From the IMG/VR virus record IMGVR_UViG_3300028840_006257, positions 62,001-126,000 of that record: a stretch of DNA of 64,000 bases. One strand, written 5' to 3'. Of this stretch, positions 5,019 to 23,857 are shown one piece after another. Within the stretch, counting starts at the first letter, position 1, and every line of letters starts with the position of its first letter. Position numbers and translations under genes: made by a program. The notes under the pieces were generated by a model. It saw only the letters and a program-made list of their open reading frames with translations. It searched no databases and had not been told where the DNA came from.

Positions 5019-5719
5019 TCGAGGCCCACATCATCTGCTGTCGGAAGTGCGAGATCCGAGACCTCGGGCTCACGATGCTGCCCGGTCAGGAGCAGTGGGT
5101 CTCGGAGGTCGTCGCGGGGAACTCCGAGGACCTCCGCGCGGAGCAGCGCAAGGGGAACGTCCGCGTCTACCGGAGGACGCGGCCCGTGAATAGGGAGCCG
5201 AAGCGTCCTCCCCCTCCGTTCGTCGTGCGCTCTCGACCCCAGGTTCGGGAGCGCGAGGAGCCTAGGGTCATCCAGAAGGTCATCGAGAAGGTCGTGGAGG
5301 TCGTCGAGACCAAGGTCGACACCGAGGAGGTCGCGCGCCAGGTGCGAGGAGCCCTGCTGGGGGACATGAGGGAGATAATCGCGGAGGAGATGAGCAGGCT
5401 GCTCGAGGCCCAGGCGACGCCCCAAAGGGCCCAGGCGACGCCCCCGACGGTCGACGCGGCCGCCCTGGAAAGCGCCCTGGAGGCGGTCTTGGGGCGCCTG
5501 GCGGGTGCTGTGGCGCTTCCGGTCGCTCGGACGGCTCCTCCGTCTCCCGACAGGCCCCTCTACCTGCCCGAGAACCTGGTCGACAAGGACGCCAAGGTCA
5601 GGATCAGGGTGAGCGAGCGTGCTCAGGACGAGGGCGCCGACCTCGACGACGCCGCCGACGCGCTCCGAAAGTTCAAGAAGCGCCACGCGGGTAAAACGAA
5701 GGAGAGCGAGGAGAGCTGA
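5015..5719 (+). CDS. Hypothetical protein
   Basis: ATGA overlap with the upstream stop; 234 aa, helical centre, low-complexity Pro/Ala stretches. Confidence 0.7.
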   Translation: MIEAHIICCRKCEIRDLGLTMLPGQEQWVSEVVAGNSEDLRAEQRKGNVRVYRRTRPVNREPKRPPPPFVVRSRPQVREREEPRVIQKVIEKVVEVVETKVDTEEVARQVRGALLGDMREIIAEEMSRLLEAQATPQRAQATPPTVDAAALESALEAVLGRLAGAVALPVARTAPPSPDRPLYLPENLVDKDAKVRIRVSERAQDEGADLDDAADALRKFKKRHAGKTKESEES

Positions 5720-5723
5720 GACG

Positions 5724-6731
5724 ATGACCGAACGTGAAACTCCGATCCACGGCGTCGGGCTAGATTGCGGGACCATGAACCTCGTCGCGGCCAGGCGGAG
5801 CAAGGAGGGCGTCGTGACGACCCGCATCAGGGACGCCTTCCTCGACCTCCCCCGGGAGCACAAGAAGATGCTCCGGCTCTCCAACGTGAACTACGTCGAG
5901 AAGGGGGAGGACCTGGTAATCGTCGGGGACGCCGCCTACGAGATGGCCAACGTCCTCGGAAAGGAGGTGAGGCGTCCGCTGCATTCCGGGGTCGTCTCTC
6001 CACAGGAGATGGAGGCCCTCGAGATCCTCGCCATCCTGATCCGACACGTCCTCAAGGAACCGGTCCAGGAGGATGAGATCTGCTACTTCTCCGTCCCTGC
6101 TCCTCCCGTGGATCAGCCGGGGAGGGACGTGATCTACCACCGCGGCATCCTGGAACGCATCATCACGGAGTGCGGCTACCAGGCTCACGCCTCGAGCGAG
6201 GCGCTGGCCATCATCTACTCCGAGTGCGCACAGGACCAGTTCAGCGGCATCGGCATCTCCTTCGGCAGCGGCCTGTCGAACGTCACGCTCGCCATCAACA
6301 CGGTCGAGGGGCTCAGCTTCTCGGTCGCCAGGGCGGGCGACTGGCTCGATCGCGGCGCGGCCAGCAGCACGGACCTCACGCGGGCTCGGATGTGCACTCT
6401 CAAGGAGAAGGGCCTCAACCTGATGCAACCCGGAGGACGCGAGGAGGAGGCGCTGTGCGTCTACTACAAGTCCCTCGTCGAGTACGTGCTCGACCACATC
6501 GCGAGCGAGTTCGACAAGATCAAGGGTCGCTTCGCGCTGCCCCACCCGATCCCCATCGTGGTCTCGGGAGGCACGAGCAAGGCCGGGGGTTTCCTCGAGT
6601 TCTTCACGCGGGTCTTCGAGGAGAAGCGCCGGAAGTTCCCCATCGAGGTCAGCGAGGTCCGGGCCGCGAAGGAGCCGCTCGACGCCGTCGCCAGGGGGCT
6701 GCTCGTCCAGGCCCTCCAGGAATATGAGTAG
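5724..6731 (+). CDS. Actin-fold (MreB/ParM/FtsA superfamily) ATPase
   Basis: ATG 5724; phosphate-1 GLDCGTMNL, connect-1 SEALAII, phosphate-2 GISFGSGLSNV, adenosine IVVSGGTS, connect-2 PLDAVARG; 335 aa. Confidence 0.85.
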   Translation: MTERETPIHGVGLDCGTMNLVAARRSKEGVVTTRIRDAFLDLPREHKKMLRLSNVNYVEKGEDLVIVGDAAYEMANVLGKEVRRPLHSGVVSPQEMEALEILAILIRHVLKEPVQEDEICYFSVPAPPVDQPGRDVIYHRGILERIITECGYQAHASSEALAIIYSECAQDQFSGIGISFGSGLSNVTLAINTVEGLSFSVARAGDWLDRGAASSTDLTRARMCTLKEKGLNLMQPGGREEEALCVYYKSLVEYVLDHIASEFDKIKGRFALPHPIPIVVSGGTSKAGGFLEFFTRVFEEKRRKFPIEVSEVRAAKEPLDAVARGLLVQALQEYE

Positions 6732-7779
6732 GTCCGACGGCCTGTCGCTCTGGACGGGGACGAGGACCGACCTGTCGTGCGTCCCCGAGCGGCTCGAGGA
6801 GTACCAGCCCGTCGTCAGCTTCAGCGGCGGCAAGGACTCGGTCGCGACCACCCTCGCGCTGCGAGAGCACGAGATCGAGGCGCGGCACGTCTTCGCCGAC
6901 ACGGGCTGGGAGTCCGAGCAGACCACCGACTACGTCCGGGAGATCGGCCAGAAGCTCGGCATCCCGATAGAGGTCGTCGAGACGACGCCGCCCGAGCTCG
7001 AGCCGTGGGTCGAGGAGCTCGTCGCCGAGGCCGAGAAGCGCCTCGGTCGAAGGTTCGGCGCGCTCCCGAGGGGGATGCTGCACCGGGGAGGGACGCCGCT
7101 GAGGATCGGCCGGTGGTGCACCATCGAGTACAAGCTGCGCCCTATCAAGGCGTACCACGAACGCGTGAGCGACGAGACGGGACTAGACGTGGTCAACGTC
7201 GTGGGCGTCCGGGCCGAGGAGAGCCTGTCTAGGGCCCGGAGGGAGACGTGGTACCTCGACCGGCAGTGGGACGGCTACATGTGGCTGCCCATCCACCACT
7301 GGCGCACGGACGACGTCCTCCGCATCCACCAGAGGCACGGCATTCCCGTCAATCCCCTCTACAGGAAGGGCCACGACCGCGTCGGCTGCTACCCGTGCAT
7401 CCTCGCGCGGAAGGACGAGATCCGCCTCATCGCTCAGCTTGAGCCCGGGCGCATCGAGATGGTGCGCGAGCTCGAGCAGCTGTTCGAGAAGATCAGGACG
7501 CGCCGTAACAGGGAGCGGCCTGGGCGCTACGGCAAGGAGGATCCCGGTTTCTTCGAGGCCGTGATCGAGCGCGGCAACTCCACGGTCCCCGCGAAGATCG
7601 ACGACGTGGTGGACTGGGCGCGTACGGGACACGGCCGCAGGGTGAGGCTCACCGAGGTCCCGCCGGGCGGCGGCTGCTTCCGGTGGGGACTGTGCGAGAC
7701 GGTGGAGAGGCCCGACGATTCCGACCGGGAGTCCATCGCTGCCGTCCTGAACGAGGCCCTGGGCACCTCGAGCGAATGA
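6724..7779 (+). CDS. PAPS-reductase family (PP-loop, Fe-S) protein
   Basis: PP-loop VSFSGGKDS, VFADTGWE, RWCTIEYK, VVGVRAEES, RVGCYPCI, C-terminal GCFRWGLCE. Start overlaps the actin-like gene stop. Confidence 0.85.
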   Translation: MSRSDGLSLWTGTRTDLSCVPERLEEYQPVVSFSGGKDSVATTLALREHEIEARHVFADTGWESEQTTDYVREIGQKLGIPIEVVETTPPELEPWVEELVAEAEKRLGRRFGALPRGMLHRGGTPLRIGRWCTIEYKLRPIKAYHERVSDETGLDVVNVVGVRAEESLSRARRETWYLDRQWDGYMWLPIHHWRTDDVLRIHQRHGIPVNPLYRKGHDRVGCYPCILARKDEIRLIAQLEPGRIEMVRELEQLFEKIRTRRNRERPGRYGKEDPGFFEAVIERGNSTVPAKIDDVVDWARTGHGRRVRLTEVPPGGGCFRWGLCETVERPDDSDRESIAAVLNEALGTSSE

Positions 7780-8289: not shown

Positions 8290-9533
8290 CGGGTCAGCTC
8301 CAGCGCAAGTTCATCCACGAGCTTCGGCGCTACTGGCGGTACCACCCCAAGTACTCGGACATCGTCGAGCACATTCAGGGGAAGTACTCGCACCGGGAGC
8401 GGCCGCAGTACGGCATCGTCCTGAAGAACAGTTCGGGCAACCAGGTTCAGCTGGCGGCGGACAACTTCCAGGGGTACGTCCACTCCTACGTCTACCTGGC
8501 GCACGTGGAGGGGAGACCGAACCTGTCCGTGGAGTGGGTGCGCGAGGACATGATCGCCATCCAGGACAACGGCGGCATGTTCCCGTCGCCTCCCGGCATC
8601 TACTACCTCGACTTCTGCGACGCGAACGGGAACCCCACGGACGAGACGTTCTACGTCGACCCGCTCCTCGACGTGATCGACGAGACCGTCCTCAAGATCA
8701 ACGACACCCAGTACCAGCTCGAGGAGGGCAAGTTCCTCGCCGGAACGCTCAGACTCTACCGGATGCCGGGCAACATCAGGCTCTACGACGGCACGAACTA
8801 CACGGCCGTCCCGGAGACGGGTGTCGTCACGCTGATCGACACCCTGACCGACGACGAGTTCCTCTCGGCCGACTACCGCTGTCCCGCCGAGAGCACGGGA
8901 CCATGGGTCGTGCGGGAGGAGTACGCCCTGCGCGAGCCCATCCCGGGCTGCGTCCTGGCCTTCGGACGCCGCGTCACTCCCGGCGACCGGCTCGCCGTGG
9001 TCGTCCAGCAGAGGCGCACCATCGCCGCCCTCGAGTACGGGGGGCGCTGGGACCTCTCGCTCGACGTGGACGTCATCGCCCGGGACCCGGACTCGCAACG
9101 TGAAATTCTCGATCAGACCTCCCTGTACCTCTGGTCTACGGCGCGGCCGAGGCTCTCGAGCCAGGGCATCGAGATCTCGGCCGTGACCATGGGAGGCGAG
9201 ACCGAGGAGACCTACGATGACGTGGCGGACGACTGGTTCTACAATGCCAGCTTCAGCATCCAGGTCCAGACCGACTGGATGATCCACGTTCCGCTCGGCA
9301 TCTGCATCCGGGCCATCGAGCCCGGCAGCGGGGAGGCCATCGTGCCCGGAACTGCTCCCCTCGTGGCCCCGTTCGTCGAGCAGATCGCGGGCCTAACGGA
9401 CGAGCAGATCGCCCAGATCCAGGCCAACTTCCGCAAGATGGCCGACCTCGGATTGCGGGCTCCATGGGATCCGTGGTTCGTGGGCAAGGAGGGCCACCCG
9501 GGCGTCTACGGCACGGGTCCGATGCTCCGTTAA
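8274..9533 (+). CDS. Tail terminator/tail-completion-like protein with an inserted beta domain
   Basis: 419 aa. C-terminal RWDLSLDVDVIARD...ILDQTSLYLW...FYNASFSIQVQTDW pattern fits a gpU/gp15-like alpha/beta fold; lies just upstream of the sheath gene. Confidence 0.5.
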   Translation: MYYFLTGQLQRKFIHELRRYWRYHPKYSDIVEHIQGKYSHRERPQYGIVLKNSSGNQVQLAADNFQGYVHSYVYLAHVEGRPNLSVEWVREDMIAIQDNGGMFPSPPGIYYLDFCDANGNPTDETFYVDPLLDVIDETVLKINDTQYQLEEGKFLAGTLRLYRMPGNIRLYDGTNYTAVPETGVVTLIDTLTDDEFLSADYRCPAESTGPWVVREEYALREPIPGCVLAFGRRVTPGDRLAVVVQQRRTIAALEYGGRWDLSLDVDVIARDPDSQREILDQTSLYLWSTARPRLSSQGIEISAVTMGGETEETYDDVADDWFYNASFSIQVQTDWMIHVPLGICIRAIEPGSGEAIVPGTAPLVAPFVEQIAGLTDEQIAQIQANFRKMADLGLRAPWDPWFVGKEGHPGVYGTGPMLR

Positions 9534-9538
9534 TGGGC

Positions 9539-9558
9539 CTATGTAGGTCCCGATATAG
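9539..9558 (+). promoter_or_regulatory. Dyad motif CTAT-N12-ATAG, copy 3
   Basis: CCTAT GTAGGTCCCGAT ATAG in the gap between stop 9533 and TTG 9574. Confidence 0.55.
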
Positions 9559-9573
9559 ACGGAGCACGCGCGC

Positions 9574-10080
9574 TTGCCGATTTTCCAGTATCAGTGCCCG
9601 AGCTGCGCCCTGCGGTTCGGATCCATGCAGCCTCGGGAGGGGGTGCGCGACTCCCTTCCCTGCAGGCGCTGCGGCAGACCTGCGACTCGGCAGCTCAGCG
9701 CGTCGAAGTTCAAGTTCGGCCACCGACCCGACGGGCCTCGCCCCCAGAACACGGGCGCGAGCTCGGTCGACCACGACGTGGACGTGATCATCGGCCGGAG
9801 CGCGAAGCAGAACCTCCGCGAGTTCCAGAAACGCCAGGACCACAAGCGTCGCGTGATCGCCGCCAACGGCACCGCGGGCGACAACCTCAGTCGGCTCGAC
9901 GACGGCGACTACTTCGTCATGACCGAGCAGCAGAGGATCGCGGCGAAGAAGGCGCGCCTCTACAACCAGGAGGCGATGAGACGGATCGTCGAGTACCGAA
10001 AGGAGCGACGCGCGTACGGCGGCCAGCCCGAACGCGTCCTCACCAGCGTCCACGAGATTCCCGACGAGGCTGCTTCCTGA
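9574..10080 (+). CDS. FmdB-like zinc-ribbon protein
   Basis: N-terminus MPIFQYQCPSC...LPCRRCG is the FmdB-type MP(I/L)YEYxCxxC...CPxCG signature. Confidence 0.75.
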   Translation: MPIFQYQCPSCALRFGSMQPREGVRDSLPCRRCGRPATRQLSASKFKFGHRPDGPRPQNTGASSVDHDVDVIIGRSAKQNLREFQKRQDHKRRVIAANGTAGDNLSRLDDGDYFVMTEQQRIAAKKARLYNQEAMRRIVEYRKERRAYGGQPERVLTSVHEIPDEAAS

Positions 10081-10516
10081 GGAAGCGGTCGCGAACCCCG
10101 GCCTCCCTCGGGAGGACCCAGACGAACAGACAGACGGATCAGATGGAGACGAATCCCGCCTAGCGGACGAGACAGACTCCCCTCCCTCGGGAGGCGGTCA
10201 GACGGAAACCGACGGAACGAATGCGGACCTGAACGCGATGTGAATGTCAGCCCGCGCTGAGCGGGCAAACCGCGACTGCAACCAGGGCCTCGAGCTCCAC
10301 AGGAGTTGTGCGCCCTGAAGGCTCGGAGAGGCTACCTCTCGTTGACTCTTTCCATTCAGACATCCCCTGCGACCTGGCAGGGCGCCGCTGATCGCGGCAT
10401 CGGACTCGTGATGGCTCGAGCCCGACGTTCGGTGACGAGCGGGCGAGCCGTCCGTACAGGTTCCACGTTCACCAGAGACAACCGGGTTCCGCAGGAGCCC
10501 GCAAGGGGTTGAAACC
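10081..10516 (+). ncRNA. Candidate structured non-coding RNA or long leader upstream of the sheath gene
   Basis: 436-nt gap in an otherwise tightly packed operon. Hairpins: CCTCCC-TC-GGGAGG twice (10102, 10181), GCCCGC/GCGGGC, GAGAGG/CCTCTC, CCCTGC/GCAGGG, GCCGC/GCGGC, and a multi-segment stem at 10413-10449. Confidence 0.45.
10119..10245 (+). repeat. Dispersed non-coding element, copy A
   Basis: Shares CAGACG...ACGAA...TAGC...CTCCCTCGGGAG[G/A]CGGTCAGA...GAATG...GAAC...ATGTGAAT with 22234..22352. Confidence 0.8.
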
Positions 10517-13500
10517 ATGGCAAATTTCCCTGGGACCATCTACGCGCCTCCTGGCGTCTACACCCGCACCAGGTTCCAGAGCCCCGTCTCTGGCGTCCTG
10601 GCGGGCGTTCGCATCCCCGTCTTCATCGGCACCGGCAACGAGCTGCTTCAGCAGCAGGACCTCGAGGTCATTCGTGGCTCTAGCAGCTCGGTCGATCAGC
10701 AGGTCCCGCAGGAGGACGAGACCGGTCGTGCCGTCGTGAGCATCTCCGATACGGGTCAGGTGACCCTCGGGGACTTCAACGGCGCGCGACAGCGCATCCA
10801 GGTCCGCAACTTCCCGATCACGAACGGAGACGGAAGCGGGACCACCGCCACGGACCCGAGTTCCATCCTCGTGACCATCAACGGCAGGCCCGACGTGGTC
10901 CTGAGCGTGGCTCGCGCCGACATCGGCGTCATCGAGATCAGCACGGCGCCCGACCTGAACGACGACGTGCGGGTGACGTACTTCTTCAAGCGGCACGACA
11001 CGCAGATGACGGACAACGTGTCGGACCAGGTGACTCCCGAGTCGGCCATCCTCGAGGGCGCCATCGGCAACCTCTTCGAGTTCACCTCGGACGACAACGT
11101 GTTCACCGTCACGGTGGACGACGACCAGAACCAGGTCGTGACGGCCACCTTCCCGACGGGGAGCGTCTCGGCCTCGACGGTCGTCTCGCTGATCAACGGC
11201 GCCGCGGCGGGAACGTCGCTCATCGCGTCGGAGTACACGAACAACTTCGGCCTCACGGCCGTTCGCCTCGTGGCGGACCGCAACCTCCTCATCGGGAGCG
11301 GTTCGGCCAACGTCGTCCTCGGCTTCACGCAGGGCCAGGCGACGAGCCGCAACAAGAACTTCGTGACGTTCAACGGTCCCATCGTGGACGGGACGAACGG
11401 GGGCATCACGACGACAGACACGTCCAAGGTCACGGTCCGCGTGAACGGGACCCAGGTCATCCCGACCGAGCTCGACGGACGCAACCGCACCGTGACGCTG
11501 CCCTTCGCGCCGGCCGCCGGCGATCTCGTCACGATTCAGTACTACTTCAACACGTGGCAGGACACCTTCGACTACCTGGCCAACATCAACGTGACGGAGG
11601 TCCTCCGCTGCGGGATCGTGCCGGGCAACAACGACTTCATCGAGCAGGCGGACTTCGTCCTGAAGGACGACCTGATCGTGTGGGGGAGCGCTTTCCTGGT
11701 GAGCGCCGGCGTGACGAGCGTCGGGGCCCCGGCCTTCGGGCCGACGCAGATCAGCGGCCTTCTGGTCGACAACCGCTGGTTCCTGTCCGAGACGACCGTC
11801 GTCGTGGACGACACGGTCTCCCCGCCAGTCGAGAACCGTCGGCAGTTCCAGCTCCCGGCCCAACCCACGACGGGCAACGGCCGCGACACACCGCTCGGCC
11901 AGAACGTCTTCCTGTCCATCTCCAACCGGCGGGTGGACCTGCCGACCAACAACCCGAACCTCGTCAAGGCCTACTGGGGTTGGAGCGTGCAGGACGCCCT
12001 CCAGCGCGGTCCCGTGACTGTGACCGAGGTCAAGGGGTCGATCATCACCCTCGAGGAGTCCGTTCCCGTCGGAGCGGGCGTCTGGGCGACCTTCTGGTAC
12101 AACATCCTCGTCGACGAGGAGTACACGGTCCAGGTCGAGACCTCGGGACCGTCCGGCATCGGCACCTACTTCCTCTTCGACGGCGACGGAAACCCCGTCT
12201 ACACGCCGACCTTCGGGAGCAAGGGCCCCGCCATGACCGGGGTGACGATTTCGTTCCCCTCGGGCTCCGAGCTCACCCCCGACGTGCACTTCGAGGGCGG
12301 CACGAGTGGTCCCGTCGAGGAGACGGTGACGGTCCAGTTCGCGGACAAGGACGCCACCATCGCGAAGTTCACGGTCGGCGGCAGCGGTCCCTACGCGTTC
12401 GTCTCGGGCGAGTCCGACAGGGCCCGGTTCATGATCGACAGCAGCGCCCTCGCGGGCGGCACGGCCGGGATCGACCTGTCCGCGCCGCACGGCATCCAGG
12501 GACTCGGTTTCAGCGCGAGCCTCCTCGGAGAGGAGATCCAGTACGACGAGGATACCGGCACCACGACCTACGACGTCCTCGCGGGCATCAACGACGACGT
12601 GTCGATGTCCGTGGACGGCGTGGTCATCTCGGTGACGGTCCCGGCCCAGACCGGCGTGAACGCGGACGCCTACGTCGAGGCCATCAACGCCGAGGCGAAG
12701 CTGTCCGCGAACTCTCCGTACCTCGACGGCACCACCCGGTTCCTCGGGACCACGGTCGTGACCGCGGGCGAGTACGACAAGCTCGTGTTCAACTACACGG
12801 GCGTCACCAACCCCGCGACGGGCCCGGTGACCGCCGTCATCGCCCCGGGAACGTACGCCTCCCCGGCCTTCATGGCCGCGGCGGTGGACACGGCCCTGAA
12901 CACGGCCATCGCGGCCCTGCCGGCGGGGTATGCGGGCCTCGACATCGCCGTGACTGCGAACGCCGACGGACAGATGCGGTTCACCTACAAGGCGGCCGAC
13001 ACCGACCTGGGCACCTCCGCGAGCGGGACCGTCACCGAGGTGGGAGCCATCGTGGGAGACACGATCACCATCGACACGGTGACCTTGACCGGGGCTCTGA
13101 CGCAGGTTTCGGGCGGTCTCGACTTCGACACCGGGCAGGCTCGGGCGACTCTCGTGCCGACCGGCGTGGAACCCGGCGACAACTTCACGATCAACGCGGG
13201 GGGTGGCCCGATCACCATCACCGCGTTGGGCGCCCAGACCCCGGGTGGCCTGAACTTCGATGAGGGGGACCAGGCGACGGGCACTATCACCGTCTCGGGA
13301 CCAATTCCGAACGACACCGTCACGATCAACGGGATCACGCTGACGGCGCTCGGAGCTCAGACCCCGGGTGGCCTGAACTTCGACGAGGGCACGCGAGCCA
13401 CCGGCACCGCCACGCTCACCGGGGTCCAGTACGGCGACACGATCTCCATCGACACCACCGCGGTCGGGGGAGGTCCCGTCACTCTGACGGCTAGCAACAC

Positions 13501-16500
13501 GCTGACCCCGGGCGGCCTTGACTTCAACGTCGGCACGGCGGCGACGGGAAGCATTCAGCTCGTGGGCGTGCGGCCCGCGACCATCGCGCCGTTCCCGGTG
13601 ACCGCGGCCGACACCGTCACCATCGGCGGGAACGTCCTGACGGCGAACGAGGGGCCGCGCACGCCGGGCGCCGACGACTTCGACGCCGGGACCAGGGCGC
13701 TCGGGAGCGTCACGGTCGTCGTGGACGCGCTCCCGGCGACGGGCGTCCTGTACGGCGACACGATCACCGTCGGGGGCATCGCCCTCGTCGCGGACAACGT
13801 CACGACTCCGGGTGGCCTGAACTTCGACGCGGGCACCCAGGCGTTCGAGGTGCTGACCGTGCTCCTGGCTCCGGGCGTCCCGACGCCTCCCGCGGTCATC
13901 ACTATCGACGTGGGCGGCGCGGCGGGCGGACCGTTCCCGCTCATCCCGGCGGGCGGTCCGCGCACCCCGGGCGCGAACGACTACGACGAGACGCTCGGGA
14001 CCACGATGGCGATAGCGGCCGACATCGCGGCGGCGATCAACGATCCGCTCAACGTGTTCTCCGCGTTCATGAGCGCGGCCGTCGGGCCCGGTCCTTCGGA
14101 CGTGACGTTCACGTGGAACGTGCCCGGCGTGGTCGCCAACGGCATCGTGAACCTGACGGCCGATCCGATGCTCTCTCCGCTCGTCGGCTTCGCCGGCGGC
14201 GTTGGCACGGAGGTCACGACCGCGACGGCCCTCGTCACGGCGCTCAGCGATCCGCTGAACGGGCTCACGGGCCTCATCCAGGCGCACAACACCGGCGGCG
14301 TTTCCAACGTCGTGAACCTGCAGGCCCTCACCCCGGGCCTCGCGGGCAACTCGATCAGCCTCGTCTCCACGGCGCCGGCGCGGCTCGTGCCGTCGGCGGC
14401 GACCATGGCGGGCGGCGTAGGCGACGACCTCACGGCCGCAACCGACGTGCAGGCGGCGGTGAACGACGTCGCCAACTCGTTCGCCACGGCGGTGACGGCC
14501 CTCACGACCGGAGACACGGCGGCCCTCACGGCGGTCACGCCCGGAGCCGTGGGCAACCTCATCACGCTGACCACGACGGCGGCCGGGAGGTTCGTGCTGT
14601 CCGCCGGGACGCTCACGGGAGGGGTCGGCGACGACATCTCGGCGGCGACGAGCCTGGTCGCGGCAATCTCCGACGCGGGCAACGGACTCGTCGGCGGCGT
14701 CGTCGCGGACAACGCCTCGGGCACGACCAACGTCGTCACCATCGACTCGTACACGCCGGGACTGGTCGGTAACGGCGTCCTCCTGGCGGAGTCCACGGCC
14801 GGAGCTCGGATCGCGCTCTCGGGCGCCACGCTGCTCGGCGGCGTCGGCGACAACACGACGGTCGCGGCCTCCATCGCGGCGGCCATCAACGACGTCGGAA
14901 ACGGCATCGTGACCTCCGTGACGGCCCTCGCGGCCCTGGCCGTCGTCACGATGACGGCGGTGACGCCGGGCAACGCCGGAAATTTGATCGGTACCACGTC
15001 GTCAGACGCGACGCGCCTGCTCATGTCGGGCCTGACCCTCGCCGGGGGCTCGGGAACCGACCTCAGCGTCGCCACGAGCATCGTCGCGGCGATCAACGAC
15101 CCGGGCAACGGGCTCGCCGTGGACGTGATGGCCGACAACGCCAGCGGAACCTCGACCACGGTCACCGTGTGGGACCTGACTCCGGGCGTGCTCGGCAACA
15201 CGAACACCATCGCCTCGTCCACGGGCACGCGGCTCCCGGTCTCGGGCGCCAACTTCACGGGCGGCGACACGGTGGTGGGCGTGGGTTCGAACATCGTCAC
15301 CGCGATCAACGACGCGGCCAACGGCCTGAACGGAATCGTGACGGCCGACAACAGCGGGGGCACCTCGGCGGTCGTGGATGTCACGGCGGCCGTGCCGGGC
15401 CCGCAGGGGAACTTCATCGTGCTCGCCTCGAGCGACGCGGGGCGCCTCCCGGTCTCCGGCGCGACCCTCACGGGAGGTGCCGGCCTCGGCGGCGGCGTGT
15501 TCGAGTTCCTCGACGCGGCGACGGTCGCGGAGGACTTCGCGATTCTCGCGGGCCTCTCCACGGACGCGCTGCCCAGCCAGGAGCAGACCAAGGTCGTCGA
15601 CGGAGATCTCGTGCGCCGGTTCACGGCGTCGGGCAGCTCCGGGCGCCTGATCTACGACCGGCTCGTCGTCCGCAACCGCGTCGTGCCCGGCAGCGGGTCG
15701 CTCGCGGCCGAGTCTCAGGTCGACCAGACCCAGCTCGTCATCGAGGGCACGAACGCCGAGGACGAGACGGGCCTCCAGCCGAGGGCATTCGGATCGGCGG
15801 GGATCGAGGCGACGATCCGGTCCGCCTCCTTGTACGGGGAGGTGGGCTTCAAGGACGGTCAGGTGGCGTCGGGGACGTACGGGGACTCGCGCGACGGACA
15901 GCCCGCGGTGATGTTCTACGCCCAGGGTGGCATCAATCCCCAGAACAACGTGTTCAAGTTCAACATCGACGGGACGCCCGTGACGGTGGTGTTCACGGAC
16001 GGCGTCGGGGCCGCGATTCCCGCGGCCGGGAGCGCCAGCGTGCCTCTCGGTCCGGTCACGACGGCGAACACGGTCCTCGCCCAGATCCTCGCCGGGGCGG
16101 TCGGCGCCGGACTGCCAGCCTCGGTCGTGCTCCAGGAGGGCGCGGGCACCCGACTGCTGAGCGCCACCGCCACCACGGACTCCGCCGTCACGATAGGTGC
16201 CGGGAACGCGAACGACGTCCTCGGCTTCTCCGACGACGCCACGGCGGCCCGGACCCTGGTCGAGCCCGAGGTCACGGCCTCCGCGCTCATGATGCACCAC
16301 AGCGCGTCCCTCAACGACGCGCTCCTGGACTACCAGAACCCCGACGCGACGTACTTCGCAGAGCAGGCCCTCGCGGGCGTCGAGACCGACTCGAGCAACG
16401 CGCAGTTCCTCTTCATCGAGTCGCAGGCCAACAACATCGTGGGCCTCGGGGCCTCGTCCAACATTACGTTCCTCACCGCCACGAGTGACTCGTGGCTGCG

Positions 16501-17965
16501 CACGGGGACGGGAGTCGGCGTGGCGACGGGCGAGGGGGCCGCGGGCGAGAGCGGATTCCAGGGCTACTACGTCACGAGCTCGGACCCGGTCGACGGCTCG
16601 GGTTCCGCCAACACGTCGTCCCTCAACAACGGCACGGGCCAGGACGGCATCATCGGCACGACGTACCGCGACGCGGTGACGGGCCTCACCTTCACCGTCC
16701 TCGAGCGCGAGGGGGGCTCCGCCTACCCGACGGGCGCGGGGGCCTGGTTCACCTTCGAGGTGCGCAAGCTCGTCACCACGGACGCGAACATCCCGGTCAA
16801 CTCCATCCCGGGCCTCGAGATGACGGTCGCGAATACCGAGGGATCCACGATCCCGCAGGGAGACACGGCCATCGTCGAGACGTTCGACCGGGGCGGCCAG
16901 GAACCCGCGGTGGGGGACTCCTACTTCGTGACCTACAACTTCTCGAAGACGGAGGCCGACTTCGAGACGATGCTGTTCACGAATCAGCGGGCCGTGGAGG
17001 CGAACTACGGGGAGGTCAACCCGGACAACCCGGTGTCCCTCGCCGCCTACCTCGGCTTCCTGAACGGCGGGGTCGTCCTCGCCATCAAGCAGGTGCCGAA
17101 GATCCCGGGTTCGAACCAGGCGAGCACCCAGAGCTACCTCGACGCGCTCGACGACCTCAGGGGACCGCTGCCGGGAGGCGCCACGCTGGACACGATCACG
17201 CCGCTCAAGGGCGACGACGAGGACCTGTTCCTCTCCCTGTCGAACCACTGCGACATCCAGTCGAGCATCCGGTACCGCTCCGAGCGGACCGGGCTGATCG
17301 GGGTCTCGTCGGGGACGCAGCCGACGGACGTCGGCGGCATCGCGCAGCAGATCGCGAACACGCGCATCAGGCTCGTGTACCCGGACATCGTGACCCTCAC
17401 GATCCAGGACGCCCTCGGGAACGACAAGCAGTTCCTCGTGGACGGGACCTTCCTCGCGGCGGCGCTCTCGGGCAACCGAGCCGCCCCGAGGATCGACGTG
17501 GCGACCCCGTGGACGAGGGCCCGCATCGTCGGCTTCGACGAGCTCGCCCGTACCCTCGACGCGGTCGAGCAGAACCAGGTGGCCGTACAGGGCGTCACCG
17601 TCCTGGACCAGCGCGGCACGATCATCCGAGTCCGTCAGGGCCTCACGACGGACATGAGCAACATCCTCACCAAGCTCCCGACGGTCATCACCATCGCGGA
17701 CGAGGTGCAGCGCTCCGCTCGCAGGGATCTCGACAGGTTCATCGGGGTCAAGTTCCTGCCGGGCATCCTCTCGGAGATCGAGGGCCAGCTCGCGACCACC
17801 ATGAAGGCGCTCAAGAACGCCGAGATCATCGCGGCGTTCACGGGCATCCAGGCGCGGACCACCAACGACCCGACGCTGGTGGAGATCGAAGCATTTTATC
17901 AGCCGATTTTCCCGCTTTTATACATCGTTATAACCTTCAACCTTCGCAGCAACCTTGGAGGTTGA
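10517..17965 (+). CDS. Contractile tail sheath protein, greatly enlarged (2482 aa)
   Basis: N-terminal APPGVYTRT; C-terminal sheath core (VLAIKQVP...RTGLIG...RIRLVYP...VRQGLTTD...IADEVQRSARRDLDRFIG...EIEAFYQPIFPLLYIVITFNL). Tube gene lies downstream. Confidence 0.92.
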   Translation: MANFPGTIYAPPGVYTRTRFQSPVSGVLAGVRIPVFIGTGNELLQQQDLEVIRGSSSSVDQQVPQEDETGRAVVSISDTGQVTLGDFNGARQRIQVRNFPITNGDGSGTTATDPSSILVTINGRPDVVLSVARADIGVIEISTAPDLNDDVRVTYFFKRHDTQMTDNVSDQVTPESAILEGAIGNLFEFTSDDNVFTVTVDDDQNQVVTATFPTGSVSASTVVSLINGAAAGTSLIASEYTNNFGLTAVRLVADRNLLIGSGSANVVLGFTQGQATSRNKNFVTFNGPIVDGTNGGITTTDTSKVTVRVNGTQVIPTELDGRNRTVTLPFAPAAGDLVTIQYYFNTWQDTFDYLANINVTEVLRCGIVPGNNDFIEQADFVLKDDLIVWGSAFLVSAGVTSVGAPAFGPTQISGLLVDNRWFLSETTVVVDDTVSPPVENRRQFQLPAQPTTGNGRDTPLGQNVFLSISNRRVDLPTNNPNLVKAYWGWSVQDALQRGPVTVTEVKGSIITLEESVPVGAGVWATFWYNILVDEEYTVQVETSGPSGIGTYFLFDGDGNPVYTPTFGSKGPAMTGVTISFPSGSELTPDVHFEGGTSGPVEETVTVQFADKDATIAKFTVGGSGPYAFVSGESDRARFMIDSSALAGGTAGIDLSAPHGIQGLGFSASLLGEEIQYDEDTGTTTYDVLAGINDDVSMSVDGVVISVTVPAQTGVNADAYVEAINAEAKLSANSPYLDGTTRFLGTTVVTAGEYDKLVFNYTGVTNPATGPVTAVIAPGTYASPAFMAAAVDTALNTAIAALPAGYAGLDIAVTANADGQMRFTYKAADTDLGTSASGTVTEVGAIVGDTITIDTVTLTGALTQVSGGLDFDTGQARATLVPTGVEPGDNFTINAGGGPITITALGAQTPGGLNFDEGDQATGTITVSGPIPNDTVTINGITLTALGAQTPGGLNFDEGTRATGTATLTGVQYGDTISIDTTAVGGGPVTLTASNTLTPGGLDFNVGTAATGSIQLVGVRPATIAPFPVTAADTVTIGGNVLTANEGPRTPGADDFDAGTRALGSVTVVVDALPATGVLYGDTITVGGIALVADNVTTPGGLNFDAGTQAFEVLTVLLAPGVPTPPAVITIDVGGAAGGPFPLIPAGGPRTPGANDYDETLGTTMAIAADIAAAINDPLNVFSAFMSAAVGPGPSDVTFTWNVPGVVANGIVNLTADPMLSPLVGFAGGVGTEVTTATALVTALSDPLNGLTGLIQAHNTGGVSNVVNLQALTPGLAGNSISLVSTAPARLVPSAATMAGGVGDDLTAATDVQAAVNDVANSFATAVTALTTGDTAALTAVTPGAVGNLITLTTTAAGRFVLSAGTLTGGVGDDISAATSLVAAISDAGNGLVGGVVADNASGTTNVVTIDSYTPGLVGNGVLLAESTAGARIALSGATLLGGVGDNTTVAASIAAAINDVGNGIVTSVTALAALAVVTMTAVTPGNAGNLIGTTSSDATRLLMSGLTLAGGSGTDLSVATSIVAAINDPGNGLAVDVMADNASGTSTTVTVWDLTPGVLGNTNTIASSTGTRLPVSGANFTGGDTVVGVGSNIVTAINDAANGLNGIVTADNSGGTSAVVDVTAAVPGPQGNFIVLASSDAGRLPVSGATLTGGAGLGGGVFEFLDAATVAEDFAILAGLSTDALPSQEQTKVVDGDLVRRFTASGSSGRLIYDRLVVRNRVVPGSGSLAAESQVDQTQLVIEGTNAEDETGLQPRAFGSAGIEATIRSASLYGEVGFKDGQVASGTYGDSRDGQPAVMFYAQGGINPQNNVFKFNIDGTPVTVVFTDGVGAAIPAAGSASVPLGPVTTANTVLAQILAGAVGAGLPASVVLQEGAGTRLLSATATTDSAVTIGAGNANDVLGFSDDATAARTLVEPEVTASALMMHHSASLNDALLDYQNPDATYFAEQALAGVETDSSNAQFLFIESQANNIVGLGASSNITFLTATSDSWLRTGTGVGVATGEGAAGESGFQGYYVTSSDPVDGSGSANTSSLNNGTGQDGIIGTTYRDAVTGLTFTVLEREGGSAYPTGAGAWFTFEVRKLVTTDANIPVNSIPGLEMTVANTEGSTIPQGDTAIVETFDRGGQEPAVGDSYFVTYNFSKTEADFETMLFTNQRAVEANYGEVNPDNPVSLAAYLGFLNGGVVLAIKQVPKIPGSNQASTQSYLDALDDLRGPLPGGATLDTITPLKGDDEDLFLSLSNHCDIQSSIRYRSERTGLIGVSSGTQPTDVGGIAQQIANTRIRLVYPDIVTLTIQDALGNDKQFLVDGTFLAAALSGNRAAPRIDVATPWTRARIVGFDELARTLDAVEQNQVAVQGVTVLDQRGTIIRVRQGLTTDMSNILTKLPTVITIADEVQRSARRDLDRFIGVKFLPGILSEIEGQLATTMKALKNAEIIAAFTGIQARTTNDPTLVEIEAFYQPIFPLLYIVITFNLRSNLGG
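13016..15483 (+). repeat. Seven N-half repeats (ending TPGGLNFDxG-like) followed by seven C-half repeats (AAIND...TPG..GN...TLxGG) within the sheath
   Basis: N-half loop motifs near 13105, 13238, 13361, 13505, 13661, 13805 and 13964. C-halves contain AINDPLN, ALSDPLN, AVNDVAN, AISDAGN, AINDVGN, AINDPGN and AINDAAN. Confidence 0.9.
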
Positions 17966-22125: not shown

Positions 22126-22233
22126 CCCTGAGACTTCGCGGGTAGGGTGAGGGAAAGCGCCCTTCCCGCACGGTGCCTCTCGGCCCCAGGGTTGGGAGGT
22201 CTTAGTGCTAACCGAGCAATCGGTGGAGCGTCG

Positions 22234-22352
22234 CAGACGCAAACGTGAATGTGAAACACATGGGAACGAACAGATCCCTCGAGCTGTAGCCTCCTCCTCT
22301 CCCTCGGGAGACGGTCAGATGTGGACGAGAATGGGATCGAACCAATGTGAAT
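22234..22352 (+). repeat. Dispersed non-coding element, copy B
   Basis: TCTCCC-TC-GGGAGA-CGGTCAGA (22298-22319), plus GAATGGGATCGAAC and ATGTGAAT, collinear with copy A. Confidence 0.8.
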
Positions 22353-22408
22353 CTCTTGCGCTGTGAAAACGACCCACCGGCTTGCTCCACGACAGAGTGG
22401 AGAGAGTC

Positions 22409-23857
22409 ATGGTCACTTTAAAAGCCCTTGAGGCCGCGATCGTTCAGGTCGAGCGCATCCGCGATTTCGAGTATTCGTTCGAAGCCAATGACGTCGAGAT
22501 CACGCTGAGACCTCTGCGTCCCGACGAAGAGACCGAGGTCCAGCGATATGCCCAGATCGCGATGGAGGACTTGGAGGAGGGTGAGGCGACTCAGGCGGCC
22601 TTCGCTGACTTCATGGATAGGATGCGGCATGCTTCGTTGGCGTTCGCCATCGTGCAGATTGGGGACCTGGATCTTCGGGACGTCGAGTACGTCGAGACTG
22701 GCGAGCAGGACGAACAGGGCAGGCCCGTCTCGGTGCCGAAGTGGGAGGGTCTCCGGAACATGATCGGGCAGGAGTGGACGCGCTCAATGCTCAGTCAAGT
22801 GTTCGCGCGATTCGGAGAACTTCTCGAACGAGTGGAGCTGAGAGCGTCCAAAAGCGTGAAATTCGACGCCGTCGACCTGGACGAGGAGATCGCTCGTGTG
22901 GAACGGCGGCTCGCCGAGCTCCGCGCCGCGAAGCAGACTCTTGAGGCATCTCCTGAGGAGGACAACGTACGCAAACAGCAGCGTCTCCTGACGGAGATTC
23001 AGAGGACTCGGCAGCAGCAACATGACAACATCCGCGGCGGCACGGCGACGGGGGACGTCGAGGAGTCCGCGAGCGCGTCGGAGCCCTCAGGAGAGAAAGT
23101 CGAGGCGTCGAAACCCGCACCGAGCGACGGTTCGGCAGTCGAACCCCGGCCCTCCTCGGCTGAGACGACCTCTCGACCCGTGGGAGAGCGGCCCTCGGCT
23201 TTCCCCGATGCCGGGCCTCCGCCTGAAGTCGATCGGCCGGACGCTTCTGAGGGGCCTCTCGGCGGCGCCGAGACGCAGGACCAGGAAGGTTCCGAATCCC
23301 CGTCGAAGCGTACCGAAGCCGTCGATTCACAGAACATTCCACTTCCACATGGAGGAGACTCCTTCTTTGATCCCACTGACCCAGATGAGGCCATGGAGAT
23401 CGAGGCCCATCGTCAGGAGATGCTGCATCGGCAGCACATCCTCCGACAACGCGAACGTAGGCTGGAGGAACAGAGACGCGAGGCTTTGGGGATGCCGAGT
23501 GCGGCTGAGGCGGCTCGAAAGGCGCAAGAGGCCCAGAGACAGGCGCAGGTCCCGCAGAAGGCAGCTCGGCTCGATCCTCGCACGAGCTCCCTGAGAGAGG
23601 CCGCCAACGTCTCCGATGCCGTCTTCGACGCAGGCACCGGCAGCATTCAGTCGGCGCGCCCCCCAACTCCTCGATCGCAGAGATCCGGTAAGGGGACGAC
23701 GGCCACCTTACACGGCAAGCCCGTCTACAAGATGCCCCCACAGACTCTTGAGAGGAAGGAGGCCACCGGAACGCCGGATCAAGGCGAACCCATGGTGCCG
23801 ATCAACCCGCCTCCGGGATCGAGGAACGAGCGATTCAGAGGTCCTGGCGAACGGTAG
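22409..23857 (+). CDS. Tail assembly chaperone-like protein with long low-complexity C-terminal region
   Basis: Lies between the tube and tape measure genes. Acidic folded N-terminal ~170 aa (ITLRPLR...SLAFAIVQIG) then a Pro/Ser/Glu-rich tail. ATG 22409 after GGAGAG. Confidence 0.6.
   Translation: MVTLKALEAAIVQVERIRDFEYSFEANDVEITLRPLRPDEETEVQRYAQIAMEDLEEGEATQAAFADFMDRMRHASLAFAIVQIGDLDLRDVEYVETGEQDEQGRPVSVPKWEGLRNMIGQEWTRSMLSQVFARFGELLERVELRASKSVKFDAVDLDEEIARVERRLAELRAAKQTLEASPEEDNVRKQQRLLTEIQRTRQQQHDNIRGGTATGDVEESASASEPSGEKVEASKPAPSDGSAVEPRPSSAETTSRPVGERPSAFPDAGPPPEVDRPDASEGPLGGAETQDQEGSESPSKRTEAVDSQNIPLPHGGDSFFDPTDPDEAMEIEAHRQEMLHRQHILRQRERRLEEQRREALGMPSAAEAARKAQEAQRQAQVPQKAARLDPRTSSLREAANVSDAVFDAGTGSIQSARPPTPRSQRSGKGTTATLHGKPVYKMPPQTLERKEATGTPDQGEPMVPINPPPGSRNERFRGPGER

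What the first reader, a model, noticed from the sequence alone, without database searches (positions are those of the whole stretch)
10081..10516. Hairpin-dense 436-nt non-coding region before the sheath gene, part of it repeated 12 kb downstream
Seen: genes here usually overlap or lie under 45 nt apart, yet this gap is 436 nt and holds at least seven stem-loops. Its 10119-10245 part is collinear with 22234-22352. The shared core is CCTCCC-TC-GGGAGG-CGGTCAGA versus TCTCCC-TC-GGGAGA-CGGTCAGA, so the outer C:G pair becomes T:A, a compensatory change. A third hairpin copy is at 10102-10115. The flanks are purine-rich with repeated GGA words (ACGGA x3, ATGGA, GCGGA x2). Inference: a phage structured RNA or cis-leader controlling the highly expressed tail genes. 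One hypothesis is a CsrA/RsmA-binding element, since these proteins bind multiple ANGGA motifs. Others are an RNase processing site or a site for the adjacent FmdB-like Zn-ribbon protein.
Basis: partly seen in the sequence, partly recalled or inferred. Interest (0 to 1): 0.75.

Follow-up and report, generated by a model that had tools for sequence, protein, structure and literature searches.

The report
Conserved folded RNA leader before sheath gene
The long gap before the tail-sheath gene of this huge phage holds a roughly 200-base folded RNA element with no Rfam match that is conserved in related huge phages and has a diverged second copy 12 kb downstream, followed by the decayed stump of a homing-endonuclease gene; it most likely tunes tail-protein output after transcription.

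Summary
The 436-nt gap (10081-10516) is real, non-coding and composite.

- **Leader (10085-10345):** a structured + strand RNA conserved upstream of the sheath-like gene in a clade of huge phages. A 9-bp long-range helix closes a ~190-nt domain with four hairpins and single-stranded CAGAY-rich boxes. In 27 distinct sequences, 91% of pair cells are paired, against 82% when shuffled and 34-60% when slid. Ten of 13 pairs show compensatory changes.
- **Homing-endonuclease stump (10342-10512):** the decayed 3' end of a GIY-YIG homing endonuclease gene. Sister phages carry the intact gene at the same spot.
- **Second copy (22214-22387):** the 12-kb-downstream repeat is a diverged paralog of the whole domain. 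There, the 3' strand of the closing helix overlaps the anti-Shine-Dalgarno arm of a strong hairpin that buries the start of the 482-aa gene. This two-state design is found in all 8 homologs.
- **Copy number:** two to three clear hairpin+box matches per 435-618 kb relative, all on one strand and all in these two gene gaps. It is not a dispersed repeat.
- **Databases and rivals:** there is no Rfam match. The CsrA idea is not supported.

Best reading: a new cis-acting post-transcriptional control RNA of the tail operon, probably read by a trans factor. No RNA-level function was shown.

The parts
9574..10080 (+). Upstream gene: a 168-aa Zn_ribbon_8 (FmdB-like) protein. It is always the gene immediately 5' of the leader.
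   Evidence: Pfam Zn_ribbon_8 at 32.6 bits, below the 34.4-bit cut-off. The atlas places it in phage Zn_ribbon_8 clusters, score 0.96. Synteny holds in 40 of 53 related loci by tblastn. Weak match to Tunturi_5 gp325, E 4e-4.
10072..10086 (+). Small hairpin P0, GCUUCC-UGA-GGAAGC, with the Zn-ribbon stop codon in its loop. It abuts the P1 5' strand.
   Evidence: Read from the sequence. GCUGCUUC and GRRAGC are kept in close relatives. Inference only.
10085..10093 (+). P1 5' strand, GCGGUCGCG, of the long-range closing helix.
   Evidence: RNAalifold. Single-sequence minimum-free-energy fold. In A7, helix 1 is 95% paired and 5 of 7 pairs show changes on both sides.
10102..10128 (+). Module 1: hairpin P2 (CCUCCC-UC-GGGAGG, 10102-10115) plus its 3' box ACCCAGACGAACA.
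   Evidence: The box co-varies with the P4 box within genomes.
10156..10166 (+). Hairpin P3 (CCGC-CUA-GCGG). Its sequence and length vary among relatives, but a hairpin is kept.
10181..10211 (+). Module 2: hairpin P4 (CCUCCC-UC-GGGAGG, 10181-10194) plus its box CGGUCAGACGGAAACCG. This is the core shared with gap 2.
   Evidence: Model R1 scores 43.2 bits here. In A5 (40 distinct copies), 5 of 6 pairs change on both sides. The stem is replaced by CCGAUC/GAUCGG in the L109 clade.
10238..10244 (+). Conserved single-stranded word AUGUGAA. It also occurs at 22249 and 22345.
10250..10266 (+). Hairpin P5 (GCCCGC-GCUGA-GCGGGC). It covaries with GCGCUC/GAGCGC in relatives.
10271..10283 (+). P1 3' strand, CGCGACUGC, followed by the conserved AACC (the CUGCAACC word).
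10283..10317 (+). Nested hairpin P6/P7 (CAGGGC...CUCC-ACA-GGAG...GCCCUG) between the domain and the ancestral start site.
   Evidence: It covaries in L020 and L022 (GGCGGG/CCCGCC).
10325..10331 (+). Ancestral Shine-Dalgarno position (GGAGAGG). In relatives without the insertion, the sheath ATG follows about 10 nt later.
   Evidence: Alignment.
10342..10512 (+). Decayed 3' remnant of a GIY-YIG homing endonuclease gene (C-terminal DNA-binding part only). It is not part of the RNA element.
   Evidence: BLASTP to the endonuclease C-terminus in L102: 45% identity over 31 aa, E 6e-7. The intact gene at the same spot in L010 has Pfam GIY-YIG at 25.2 bits and NUMOD3 at 40 bits. Alignment. GC3 is about 0.64 by hand count, against about 0.9 for real genes.
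10517..17965 (+). Downstream gene: a 2482-aa sheath-like virion protein with internal repeats of about 70 aa. Its translation start is unstructured.
   Evidence: Start-region fold z +0.3.
22138..22199 (+). Gap 2: two hairpins after the 263-aa gene. In relatives the second is followed by a U-tract, making an intrinsic terminator.
22214..22242 (+). Gap 2 closing helix, 5' strands: GAGCAAUCGGUGG and GCGUCGCAGACGCAA.
   Evidence: It covaries in G003 (GAGCAG/CUGCUU) and G004 (GCAGCC/GGUUGC); these pairings were read by eye from the alignment.
22298..22324 (+). Gap 2 module: hairpin UCUCCC-UC-GGGAGA plus box CGGUCAGAUGUGG.
   Evidence: R1 scores 39.2 bits. Orthologs in L063-L065, L078, L082 and L084.
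22356..22387 (+). Gap 2 closing helix, 3' strands: UUGCGCUGUGA and CCACCGGCUUGCUC.
22374..22412 (+). Hairpin burying the Shine-Dalgarno sequence and start codon of the 482-aa gene (GGCUU-G-CUCCAC / GUGGAG-A-GAGUC). Its 5' arm shares 9 nt with the closing-helix 3' strand.
   Evidence: -18.8 kcal/mol, z -3.3, 0 of 200 shuffles. An equivalent hairpin and overlap occur in all 8 homologs.
22409..23857 (+). Gene downstream of gap 2: a 482-aa protein of unknown function. There is a weak lead to tail assembly chaperones.

Best explanation
The gap is composite.

(1) 10085-10345 is a conserved, folded, intercistronic leader RNA on the + strand, made as part of the tail-gene transcript.
- A 9-bp long-range helix (P1) starts 5 nt after the Zn-ribbon stop codon. 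It closes a ~190-nt domain that holds four stable hairpins (loops mostly UC or UUCG) and U-poor single strands rich in CAGAY.
- Two hairpins (P2, P4) are each followed by the same kind of box (CCARAYKGAAAC).
- A diverged paralog of the whole domain precedes the 482-aa gene at 22409.

(2) 10342-10512 is the dead 3' end of a GIY-YIG homing endonuclease that once sat between the leader and the sheath start.

Mechanism (inferred, not shown): the domain is a cis-acting post-transcriptional control element that is read by a trans factor, most likely a protein, at the hairpin+box modules.
- At the downstream copy the logic is visible. The 3' strand of the closing helix is also the anti-Shine-Dalgarno arm of a strong hairpin over the start of the 482-aa gene. 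A closed domain therefore frees the ribosome site and an open domain buries it, giving a translational switch.
- At the sheath copy the start site is open, and the leader tolerates a 0.9-kb insertion between itself and the sheath ATG. There it more likely acts at a distance, by protecting or processing the transcript at the step from low-copy genes (tail terminator, Zn-ribbon) to the high-copy sheath.
For: Structure
- R2 alignment A7 (27 distinct sequences): 91% of cells paired vs 82% shuffled and 34-60% slid. Ten of 13 pairs have changes on both sides (39 cells). None of 500 shuffles reaches the observed value on any of the five measures.
- P1 is recovered by RNAalifold and by single-sequence folding.
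- Strand asymmetry: z -3.2 on + vs -0.9 on -.
- The P4 stem is wholly replaced in one clade while the hairpin is kept.

Conservation
- The leader lies at the same syntenic spot in the relatives' loci.
- It is as conserved in nucleotides as the flanking genes are in protein.

Paralogy
- Local alignment z 10.7.
- R2 finds gap 2 full-length as the second-best hit genome-wide in G000, G001 and G003.
- R1 gives only two to three clear hairpin+box matches per 435-618 kb genome, all in these two gaps and all on one strand.

Switch at gap 2
- Start-site hairpin of -18.8 kcal/mol, z -3.3.
- It overlaps the closing-helix 3' strand in all 8 homologs, with different sequences in G003 and G004.

Trans factor
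- CAGAY occurs 6 times vs 0.5 expected (P 1.6e-5), on the + strand only, and 8 times in G002 gap 2.
- The P2 and P4 boxes co-vary within genomes (1 of 5000 permutations).

Homing-endonuclease remnant.

Stoichiometry context: the upstream 419-aa gene is homologous to the Tunturi_5 'tail terminator', and the downstream gene to its 'tail sheath'.
Against: - No RNA data. No RNA run holding this sequence was listed, so transcript ends, processing and expression are unknown.
- No binding partner was identified. No complementary RNA exists in the 213 kb held.
- A7 was fitted to the model's structure, which leans the counts towards it. The sequences are related, and the permutation tests do not control for relatedness.
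- P1 is mostly conserved rather than variable, so much of its support comes from a few clades.
- The gap-1 leader stays intact when a 0.9-kb gene separates it from the sheath start (L010, L012). This argues against direct control of sheath translation.
- Gap 2 in G002 lacks the hairpin, so the hairpin itself is not indispensable.
Confidence: 0.55

Rival explanations
1. A purely structural punctuation element with no dedicated trans factor. The stable hairpins and closing helix are RNase (III, E or J) processing and barrier structures. They cut the polycistronic tail mRNA and give the sheath segment a protected 5' end, and the upstream segment a protected 3' end. This would set different half-lives for low-copy and high-copy tail genes.
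For: - It sits between genes at steps in protein copy number.
- Its role does not depend on distance from the sheath start (L010 and L012 with an intact homing endonuclease still score 124-129 bits).
- The UUCG/UC tetraloop-type hairpins are typical stability elements.
- Gap 2 has a composite closing helix of about 24 bp, similar to a processing stalk.
Against: - It does not explain the conserved single-stranded boxes, the CAGAY enrichment or their co-variation within genomes.
- It does not explain the conserved overlap of the closing helix with the anti-Shine-Dalgarno arm in gap 2.
- P1 in gap 1 is only 9 bp, too short for a classical RNase III site (established knowledge).
Confidence: 0.2
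2. A processive antitermination element in the RNA, like HK022 putL/putR or nut/boxA-boxB, or a loading site for a NusG paralog. The element would make RNA polymerase read through terminators in the very long tail operon. That would explain two copies per genome and action at a distance.
For: - Two similar cis elements per genome in one long same-strand operon.
- Action at a distance is compatible with the homing-endonuclease insertions.
- The hairpin-plus-conserved-box layout resembles boxB/boxA.
- The box GGCGGUCAGACG faintly resembles ops, GGCGGTAGnnTG (recalled from memory).
- Weak NusG-like ORFs occur in G003 and G004.
Against: - No NusG-like gene in the window's own contig, nor in the 92-94% complete G001 and G002.
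- The box is not conserved as ops across clades.
- The gap-2 copy lies just after, not before, the only clear intrinsic terminator.
- The gap-2 coupling to the start-site hairpin points to translation.
Confidence: 0.08
3. A separate small RNA gene that acts in trans on host or phage targets, rather than part of the tail mRNA.
For: A compact closed domain of about 190 nt with a defined closing helix. There is no Rfam match, so it would be a new sRNA.
Against: - No promoter-like or terminator-like signals flank it.
- P1 starts 2-5 nt after the upstream stop codon, and a small hairpin spans that stop codon.
- In gap 2 the domain is physically coupled to the downstream start site.
Confidence: 0.07
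4. A CsrA/RsmA binding leader or sponge.
For: Four ANGGA and two GCGGA words lie in purine-rich single strands of 10119-10245.
Against: - ANGGA occurs 4 times vs 1.5 expected (P 0.06) and 0 times in 22201-22408.
- Counts in relatives are 1-4, and the positions are not conserved.
- No GGA lies in the P2, P4 or other UC/UUCG hairpin loops.
- No CsrA gene in five phage genomes.
Confidence: 0.03
5. A DNA-level feature: a homing-endonuclease recognition and co-conversion tract, or iteron-like protein-binding sites or a promoter. Conservation would then be due to gene conversion or DNA binding, not RNA folding.
For: - Homing endonuclease genes are inserted at this exact spot in several lineages and in both orientations.
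- Short words (CAGAY) are repeated.
Against: - Compensatory changes keep the helices, including a long-range one 180 nt apart.
- Folding and word bias are strand-specific.
- A second copy exists at a locus without any homing endonuclease.
Confidence: 0.05

Closest known systems
Translational riboswitches and protein-responsive mRNA operators (for example ribosomal-protein leaders, the thrS operator)
   Same: - A conserved multi-hairpin domain closed by a P1 helix.
- In gap 2 the 3' strand of that helix doubles as the anti-Shine-Dalgarno strand of a start-site hairpin, giving two mutually exclusive folds.
   Different: - No ligand or protein is known, and there is no Rfam match.
- The gap-1 copy has an open start site and tolerates 0.9 kb between itself and the gene.
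Phage Mu Com/mom translational activation
   Same: - A small zinc-binding protein gene lies immediately upstream of the target.
- A hairpin-containing RNA site lies between the two genes.
- A Shine-Dalgarno-burying stem exists, though here only at the gap-2 copy. The Mu system is recalled from memory.
   Different: - The Zn-ribbon protein here is a Zn_ribbon_8 family member, not Com.
- The sheath start next to it is unstructured.
- The structured start site is 12 kb away.
- Binding is untested.
HK022 putL/putR and lambda nut antitermination RNAs
   Same: - Two related cis-acting structured RNA elements per phage genome within long operons.
- A hairpin-plus-box layout.
   Different: - The domain is about 190 nt with a closing helix, against about 70 nt for put.
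- No sequence likeness.
- One copy lies after a terminator and is coupled to a ribosome binding site.
5' mRNA stabilisers and intercistronic processing structures (T7 RNase III sites, the SP82 stabiliser, STAB-SD, puf/pap operon hairpins)
   Same: - Stable hairpins between genes of very different expression level in one operon.
- Shine-Dalgarno-like GGGAGG words in the leader.
- Action at a distance on the downstream message.
   Different: - The Shine-Dalgarno-like words are paired inside hairpins.
- The conserved single-stranded boxes and the long-range closing helix are not features of those elements.
Free-standing GIY-YIG homing endonucleases of T4-like phages (seg genes); applies to 10342-10512 only
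   Same: - Inserted between two conserved genes.
- Intact copies in sister genomes carry GIY-YIG and NUMOD3 domains.
- Presence or absence is patchy across relatives.
   Different: In the window only about 55 codons of the C-terminal DNA-binding part remain, with no catalytic domain.

Membership tests
CsrA/RsmA-binding RNAs (CsrB/RsmZ-type sponges or CsrA-regulated leaders) | Multiple A(N)GGA motifs, above chance | tested here: not met
   4 vs 1.5 expected in 10081-10345 (P 0.06). 0 in 22201-22408.
CsrA/RsmA-binding RNAs (CsrB/RsmZ-type sponges or CsrA-regulated leaders) | GGA presented in hairpin loops and conserved among homologs | tested here: not met
   The P2, P4 and most other loops are UC, UUC or UUCG; none carries GGA. 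The AUGGA position varies (AUGGG, AUUGA, ACGUGA, AUAGA).
Any Rfam 15 family | Score at or above the family gathering threshold | tested here: not met
   No hit in the whole window. The best sub-threshold hits are at most 17.6 bits with E of about 0.5 or more.
REP/BIME-like dispersed intergenic repeats | Many copies scattered in intergenic regions regardless of gene and orientation | tested here: not met
   Two to three clear matches in each 435-618 kb relative, all in the same two syntenic gaps and on one strand. One extra weak match in the window's own contig.
Intrinsic (Rho-independent) terminator | GC-rich hairpin followed by a U-tract | tested here: not met
   No such site in 9500-10700; P2 and P4 lack U-tracts. 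A separate hairpin in gap 2 (22176-22199) does carry a U-tract in relatives.
Riboswitch-like translational switch | Conserved sensor domain closed by a helix whose 3' strand competes with a Shine-Dalgarno-sequestering hairpin | tested here: met
   Met for the gap-2 copy only: (8 of 8 homologs). Not met for the gap-1 copy, whose start site is open.
Riboswitch-like translational switch | Specific ligand or protein binding that shifts the fold | not testable with these tools
   Needs in-line probing, EMSA or pull-down.
RfaH/ops or NusG-paralog recruitment element | ops-type consensus, and a cognate NusG paralog encoded or available | tested here: not met
   The box varies between clades. NusG-like ORFs occur only in G003 and G004, at 21-23 bits, and not in G000, G001 or G002.
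GIY-YIG homing endonuclease gene (10342-10512) | GIY-YIG catalytic domain | tested here: not met
   Absent from the window's stump (protein 1). Present in the L010 gene at the same site (25.2 bits vs a 22.6-bit cut-off).
GIY-YIG homing endonuclease gene (10342-10512) | Homology of the remaining frame to the C-terminal DNA-binding part of the intact genes at the same locus | tested here: met
   45% identity over 31 aa to the L102 endonuclease C-terminus, E 6e-7. No significant alignment to L115.
Contractile-tail sheath protein (the downstream gene) | Sequence or profile match to sheath families, or homology to an annotated sheath | tested here: inconclusive
   No Pfam, PHROG or PDB hit. Homologous to Tunturi_5 gp326, annotated 'tail sheath' (E 4e-31).

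The most novel reading that the evidence does not exclude
The two paralogous domains are receptors for one phage-encoded regulator. Candidates are the Zn-ribbon protein always encoded just upstream, or a small-molecule or assembly-state signal. The regulator would read the hairpin+CAGAY boxes and so couple the output of the sheath and of the downstream tail-assembly genes. That would be a dedicated RNA-based stoichiometry controller for the contractile tail of huge phages, and its recognition code would drift together with the boxes from clade to clade.
Probability: 0.25. Interest if true: 0.75.

Novelty: new member of a known kind. Interest (0 to 1): 0.55.

Why it matters
- Very little is known about how huge phages (200-700 kb) set the very different copy numbers of their tail proteins.
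- This is a covariation-supported RNA motif with no Rfam match. It has two copies per genome at fixed places in the tail operon of a widespread clade; the search for homologs of the downstream protein returned 969 proteins.
- One copy shows a clear two-state ribosome-site switch.
- A distant cultured relative (Tunturi 5 on an acidobacterial host) keeps the gene order and a suggestive module. That phage makes the question testable at the bench.
- The locus is also a clean natural series of homing-endonuclease invasion and decay: intact, truncated, stump and absent.

Tried and rejected
- **RNA evidence:** two run searches listed only DNA metagenomes and no RNA run.
- **Sigma-70 promoter and terminator scan of 9500-10700:** nothing found.
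- **8-mer enrichment in the contig's intergenic regions, to find a phage promoter motif:** only tRNA-like words, nothing shared with the leaders.
- **Upstream small ORF idea (GGGAGG, 7 nt, AUG in the box):** the AUG is present in only about 60% of copies. The window has ACG; others have AUU, AUC or AUA. Frames and stops are not conserved, so this was rejected as the conserved function (by-eye reading).
- **Antisense partner for the boxes:** none in 213 kb.
- **All-against-all covariation scan for pseudoknots:** only noise.
- **Small ORF TTG 10342-10512 as a real gene:** rejected. It has low GC3, no homolog as an independent gene, and matches the tail of a homing endonuclease.
- **Sheath start-site sequestration:** not significant.
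- **R1 on Tunturi_5:** no significant hit. The by-eye likeness (hairpin plus UUAGAUGAG) is only suggestive.
Full report
**Context.** The window is bases 62001-126000 of a 213-kb IMG/VR viral contig that CheckV estimates to be 40% complete, so it comes from a huge phage (GC about 65%). Nearly all genes lie on the + strand and are tightly packed.

The gap 10081-10516 lies between a 168-aa Zn_ribbon_8 protein (9574-10080) and a 2482-aa ORF (10517-17965). That ORF has no Pfam, PHROG or PDB sequence match. Its first 400 residues, however, are homologous to gp326 of Tunturiibacter phage Tunturi_5, annotated 'tail sheath' (32% identity, E 4e-31). Tunturi 5 is a 309-kb myovirus (PMC11924767).

The 419-aa gene at 8274-9533 matches that phage's 'tail terminator' (E 5e-11). 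A protein further downstream carries a weak Phage_base_V domain.

**Checking the observation.** All the sequence statements hold.
- CCTCCCTCGGGAGG occurs at 10102-10115 and 10181-10194, and TCTCCCTCGGGAGA at 22298-22311.
- The 12-mer CTCCCTCGGGAG occurs only these three times in 213 kb, always on the + strand.
- The best local alignment between the two gaps (10176-10248 vs 22293-22355) scores 47, against 19.3 +/- 2.6 for dinucleotide shuffles (z 10.7).
- The whole 436 nt folds only slightly better than chance (z -1.7).
- The conserved domain alone gives z -3.2 on the + strand and -0.9 on the - strand.

**Relatives.** Protein-anchored searches fetched 56 viral and 60 metagenomic loci with the same gene order. 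Close relatives have a gap of 252-274 nt. The first ~260 nt of the window's gap align with the whole gap of these relatives, including their Shine-Dalgarno site and ATG. The window therefore carries about 175 extra nucleotides between the conserved leader and the present ATG.

**The extra 175 nt.** In L010, L012, L013 and L115, an intact GIY-YIG plus NUMOD3 homing endonuclease gene sits at exactly this place (Pfam). L102 has an internally deleted one. L025 and L026 have one on the other strand.

The only open frame in the window's extra piece (10342-10512) aligns with the C-terminal DNA-binding end of the L102 enzyme (45% identity over 31 aa, E 6e-7). It shares the last ~70 nt at the DNA level. 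This part is thus a decayed homing-endonuclease stump and not part of the RNA element.

**The leader.** RNAalifold on 12 and then 23 distinct sequences predicts a long-range helix. It pairs GCGGUCGCG (10085-10093), which starts 5 nt after the upstream stop codon, with CGCGACUGC (10271-10279).

This helix encloses the following:
- hairpin P2 (10102-10115);
- hairpin P3 (10156-10166);
- hairpin P4 (10181-10194);
- hairpin P5 (10250-10266);
- U-poor single strands between them.

A nested hairpin P6/P7 (10283-10317) follows. Single-sequence folding of the window recovers P1, P2, P4 and P5.

A covariance model built from 23 sequences (R2) re-aligned 29 matches, 27 of them distinct. On that alignment:
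- 91% of pair cells are standard pairs, against 82% after shuffling and 34-60% when the partner is slid;
- 10 of 13 pairs have changes on both sides (39 cells);
- none of 500 shuffles reaches the observed value for any measure;
- P1 is 95% paired, with both-sided changes in 5 of 7 pairs.

The P4 stem is CCUCCC/GGGAGG in most relatives, but CCGAUC/GAUCGG in the L109/L110 clade and GCGCC/GGGC in the L020 clade.

Two caveats apply. The alignment was fitted to the model, and the sequences are related.

**Conserved single strands.** Each of P2 and P4 is followed by a box of the form CCARAYKGAAAC. The two boxes change together from clade to clade. Within-genome similarity exceeds between-genome similarity in all but 1 of 5000 permutations (relatedness not controlled).

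The word CAGAY occurs 6 times in 10081-10345 against 0.5 expected (P 1.6e-5). It never occurs on the opposite strand there. It is frequent in most relatives, and G002 gap 2 has eight copies.

ANGGA, the basis of the CsrA idea, occurs 4 times against 1.5 expected. It is absent from 22201-22408 and is not conserved. No CsrA gene was found in five phage genomes.

**The second copy.** The hairpin+box model R1 finds only two to three clear matches in each near-complete relative of 435-618 kb. They always lie before the sheath-like gene and before the homolog of the 482-aa gene. The window's own contig has one extra weak match (G000:43839, 21.9 bits).

The whole-domain model R2, built only from gap-1 sequences, finds gap 2 over its full length as the second-best hit genome-wide. 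This holds in G000 (E 0.13), G001 (E 0.008) and G003 (E 0.2). These E-values are individually weak; the point is that the same locus ranks second in all three genomes.

Gap 2 begins with two hairpins; in relatives the second carries a U-tract, making an intrinsic terminator. A composite closing helix then encloses the hairpin+box module and AUGUGAA words:
- GAGCAAUCGGUGG pairs with CCACCGGCUUGCUC;
- GCGUCGCAGACGCAA pairs with UUGCGCUGUGA.

Directly after it, a hairpin (GGCUU-G-CUCCAC / GUGGAG-A-GAGUC) buries the Shine-Dalgarno sequence and reaches the AUG (-18.8 kcal/mol, z -3.3, 0 of 200 shuffles). Its 5' arm shares nine nucleotides with the 3' strand of the closing helix, so the two folds compete.

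The same arrangement is found in all eight gap-2 homologs, with different sequences in the distant genomes:
- G003 has closing helix GAGCAG/CUGCUU and start-site hairpin GCUUCCCU/AGGGAAGC;
- G004 has closing helix GCAGCC/GGUUGC and start-site hairpin GUUGCUUCCC/GGGGAAAGCAAC.

By contrast, the sheath gene's start region is unstructured in the window and in four relatives (z -0.6 to +1.1).

**Interpretation.**

*Shown:*
- a conserved, + strand-specific, covariation-supported RNA fold;
- two paralogous copies at fixed places in the tail operon;
- a homing-endonuclease stump at the 3' end of the gap;
- no membership in any Rfam family;
- no tRNA;
- no dispersed-repeat behaviour.

*Inferred:* the domains are cis-acting post-transcriptional control elements. 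For gap 2 the anatomy is that of a translational switch. For gap 1 a role at a distance is more likely, such as transcript protection or processing at the step from low-copy to high-copy tail genes, or polymerase modification. Two facts point that way. The start site is open, and the leader is fully kept when 0.9 kb of endonuclease gene separates it from the sheath ATG (124-129 bits in L010 and L012).

The conserved boxes and their drift within genomes suggest a co-evolving trans factor. The Zn-ribbon protein encoded just upstream is a candidate by position only.

In nearly all relatives P1 starts 2-5 nt after the upstream stop codon. A ribosome terminating there would melt it, which is a possible link to upstream translation. 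This is inference.

**Limits.** No RNA-level data could be obtained. The host is unknown. The functions of the 482-aa and 263-aa proteins are unknown.

Noticed in passing
window 1739-4468 (+): The 909-aa ORF carries an intein: Hint/Hom_end_hint, a LAGLIDADG_3 endonuclease domain and Intein_splicing. The host protein was not identified.
   Followed up: no
window 5619-6731 (+): The 370-aa ORF is a strong match to Pfam Volactin, an actin-like family (252 bits, E 1e-74). This is a phage-encoded actin homolog.
   Followed up: no
window 18009-20606 (+): An 865-aa fusion-like ORF lies right after the sheath-like gene, in a dip of GC (about 0.62). It combines a Ros/MucR zinc finger, HTH motifs, HNH-like and methyltransferase-like parts. 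It looks like another mobile or inserted gene.
   Followed up: no
window 6724-7779 and 20570-21055 (+): A PAPS-reductase-like gene (phrog_424) and an S-adenosylmethionine decarboxylase-like gene sit among the tail genes.
   Followed up: no
window 13200-15470 (inside the 2482-aa gene): Several families of diverged direct repeats, with spacings of 207-444 nt; the commonest unit of 207-213 nt corresponds to about 70 aa. These are probably repeated decoration domains that account for the giant size of the sheath-like protein.
   Followed up: no
window 30573-35984 and 39056-50077 (+): Giant ORFs of 1803 and 3673 aa lie in the tail region. The neighbouring 821-aa ORF (35988-38453) has a weak Phage_base_V domain.
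   Followed up: no
G000:C1:43839-43879 (outside the window, about 18 kb upstream): A third, weaker hairpin+box copy (CCCCCUCUCGGGG ACGGCCAAAC, R1 21.9 bits) lies directly before the ribosome site of a small gene.
   Followed up: partly
L025/L026 (1182-nt gap) and L010/L012/L013/L102/L115: GIY-YIG homing endonuclease genes lie at the same leader-sheath junction in both orientations and in different states of decay. This suggests repeated invasion of this site.
   Followed up: partly
G003:C1:32345-32620 and G004:C1:162669-162974: Weak NusG-N-terminal-like ORFs (21-23 bits) occur in two complete related huge-phage genomes. Weak sigma-70 region-2-like ORFs occur in four.
   Followed up: no
L163 8854-8979 (Tunturi_5, gap before gp326): The cultured relative keeps the order tail terminator, small Zn-ribbon-like protein, 126-nt gap, sheath. 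The gap has a hairpin followed by CGGACCUUAGAUGAGG, which resembles the box, but model R1 does not score it.
   Followed up: partly
window 21056-21258 (+): The apparent 278-nt gap before the 263-aa gene holds a possible small ORF, followed by a hairpin with a T-run (21270-21298). No hairpin+box module is present.
   Followed up: no
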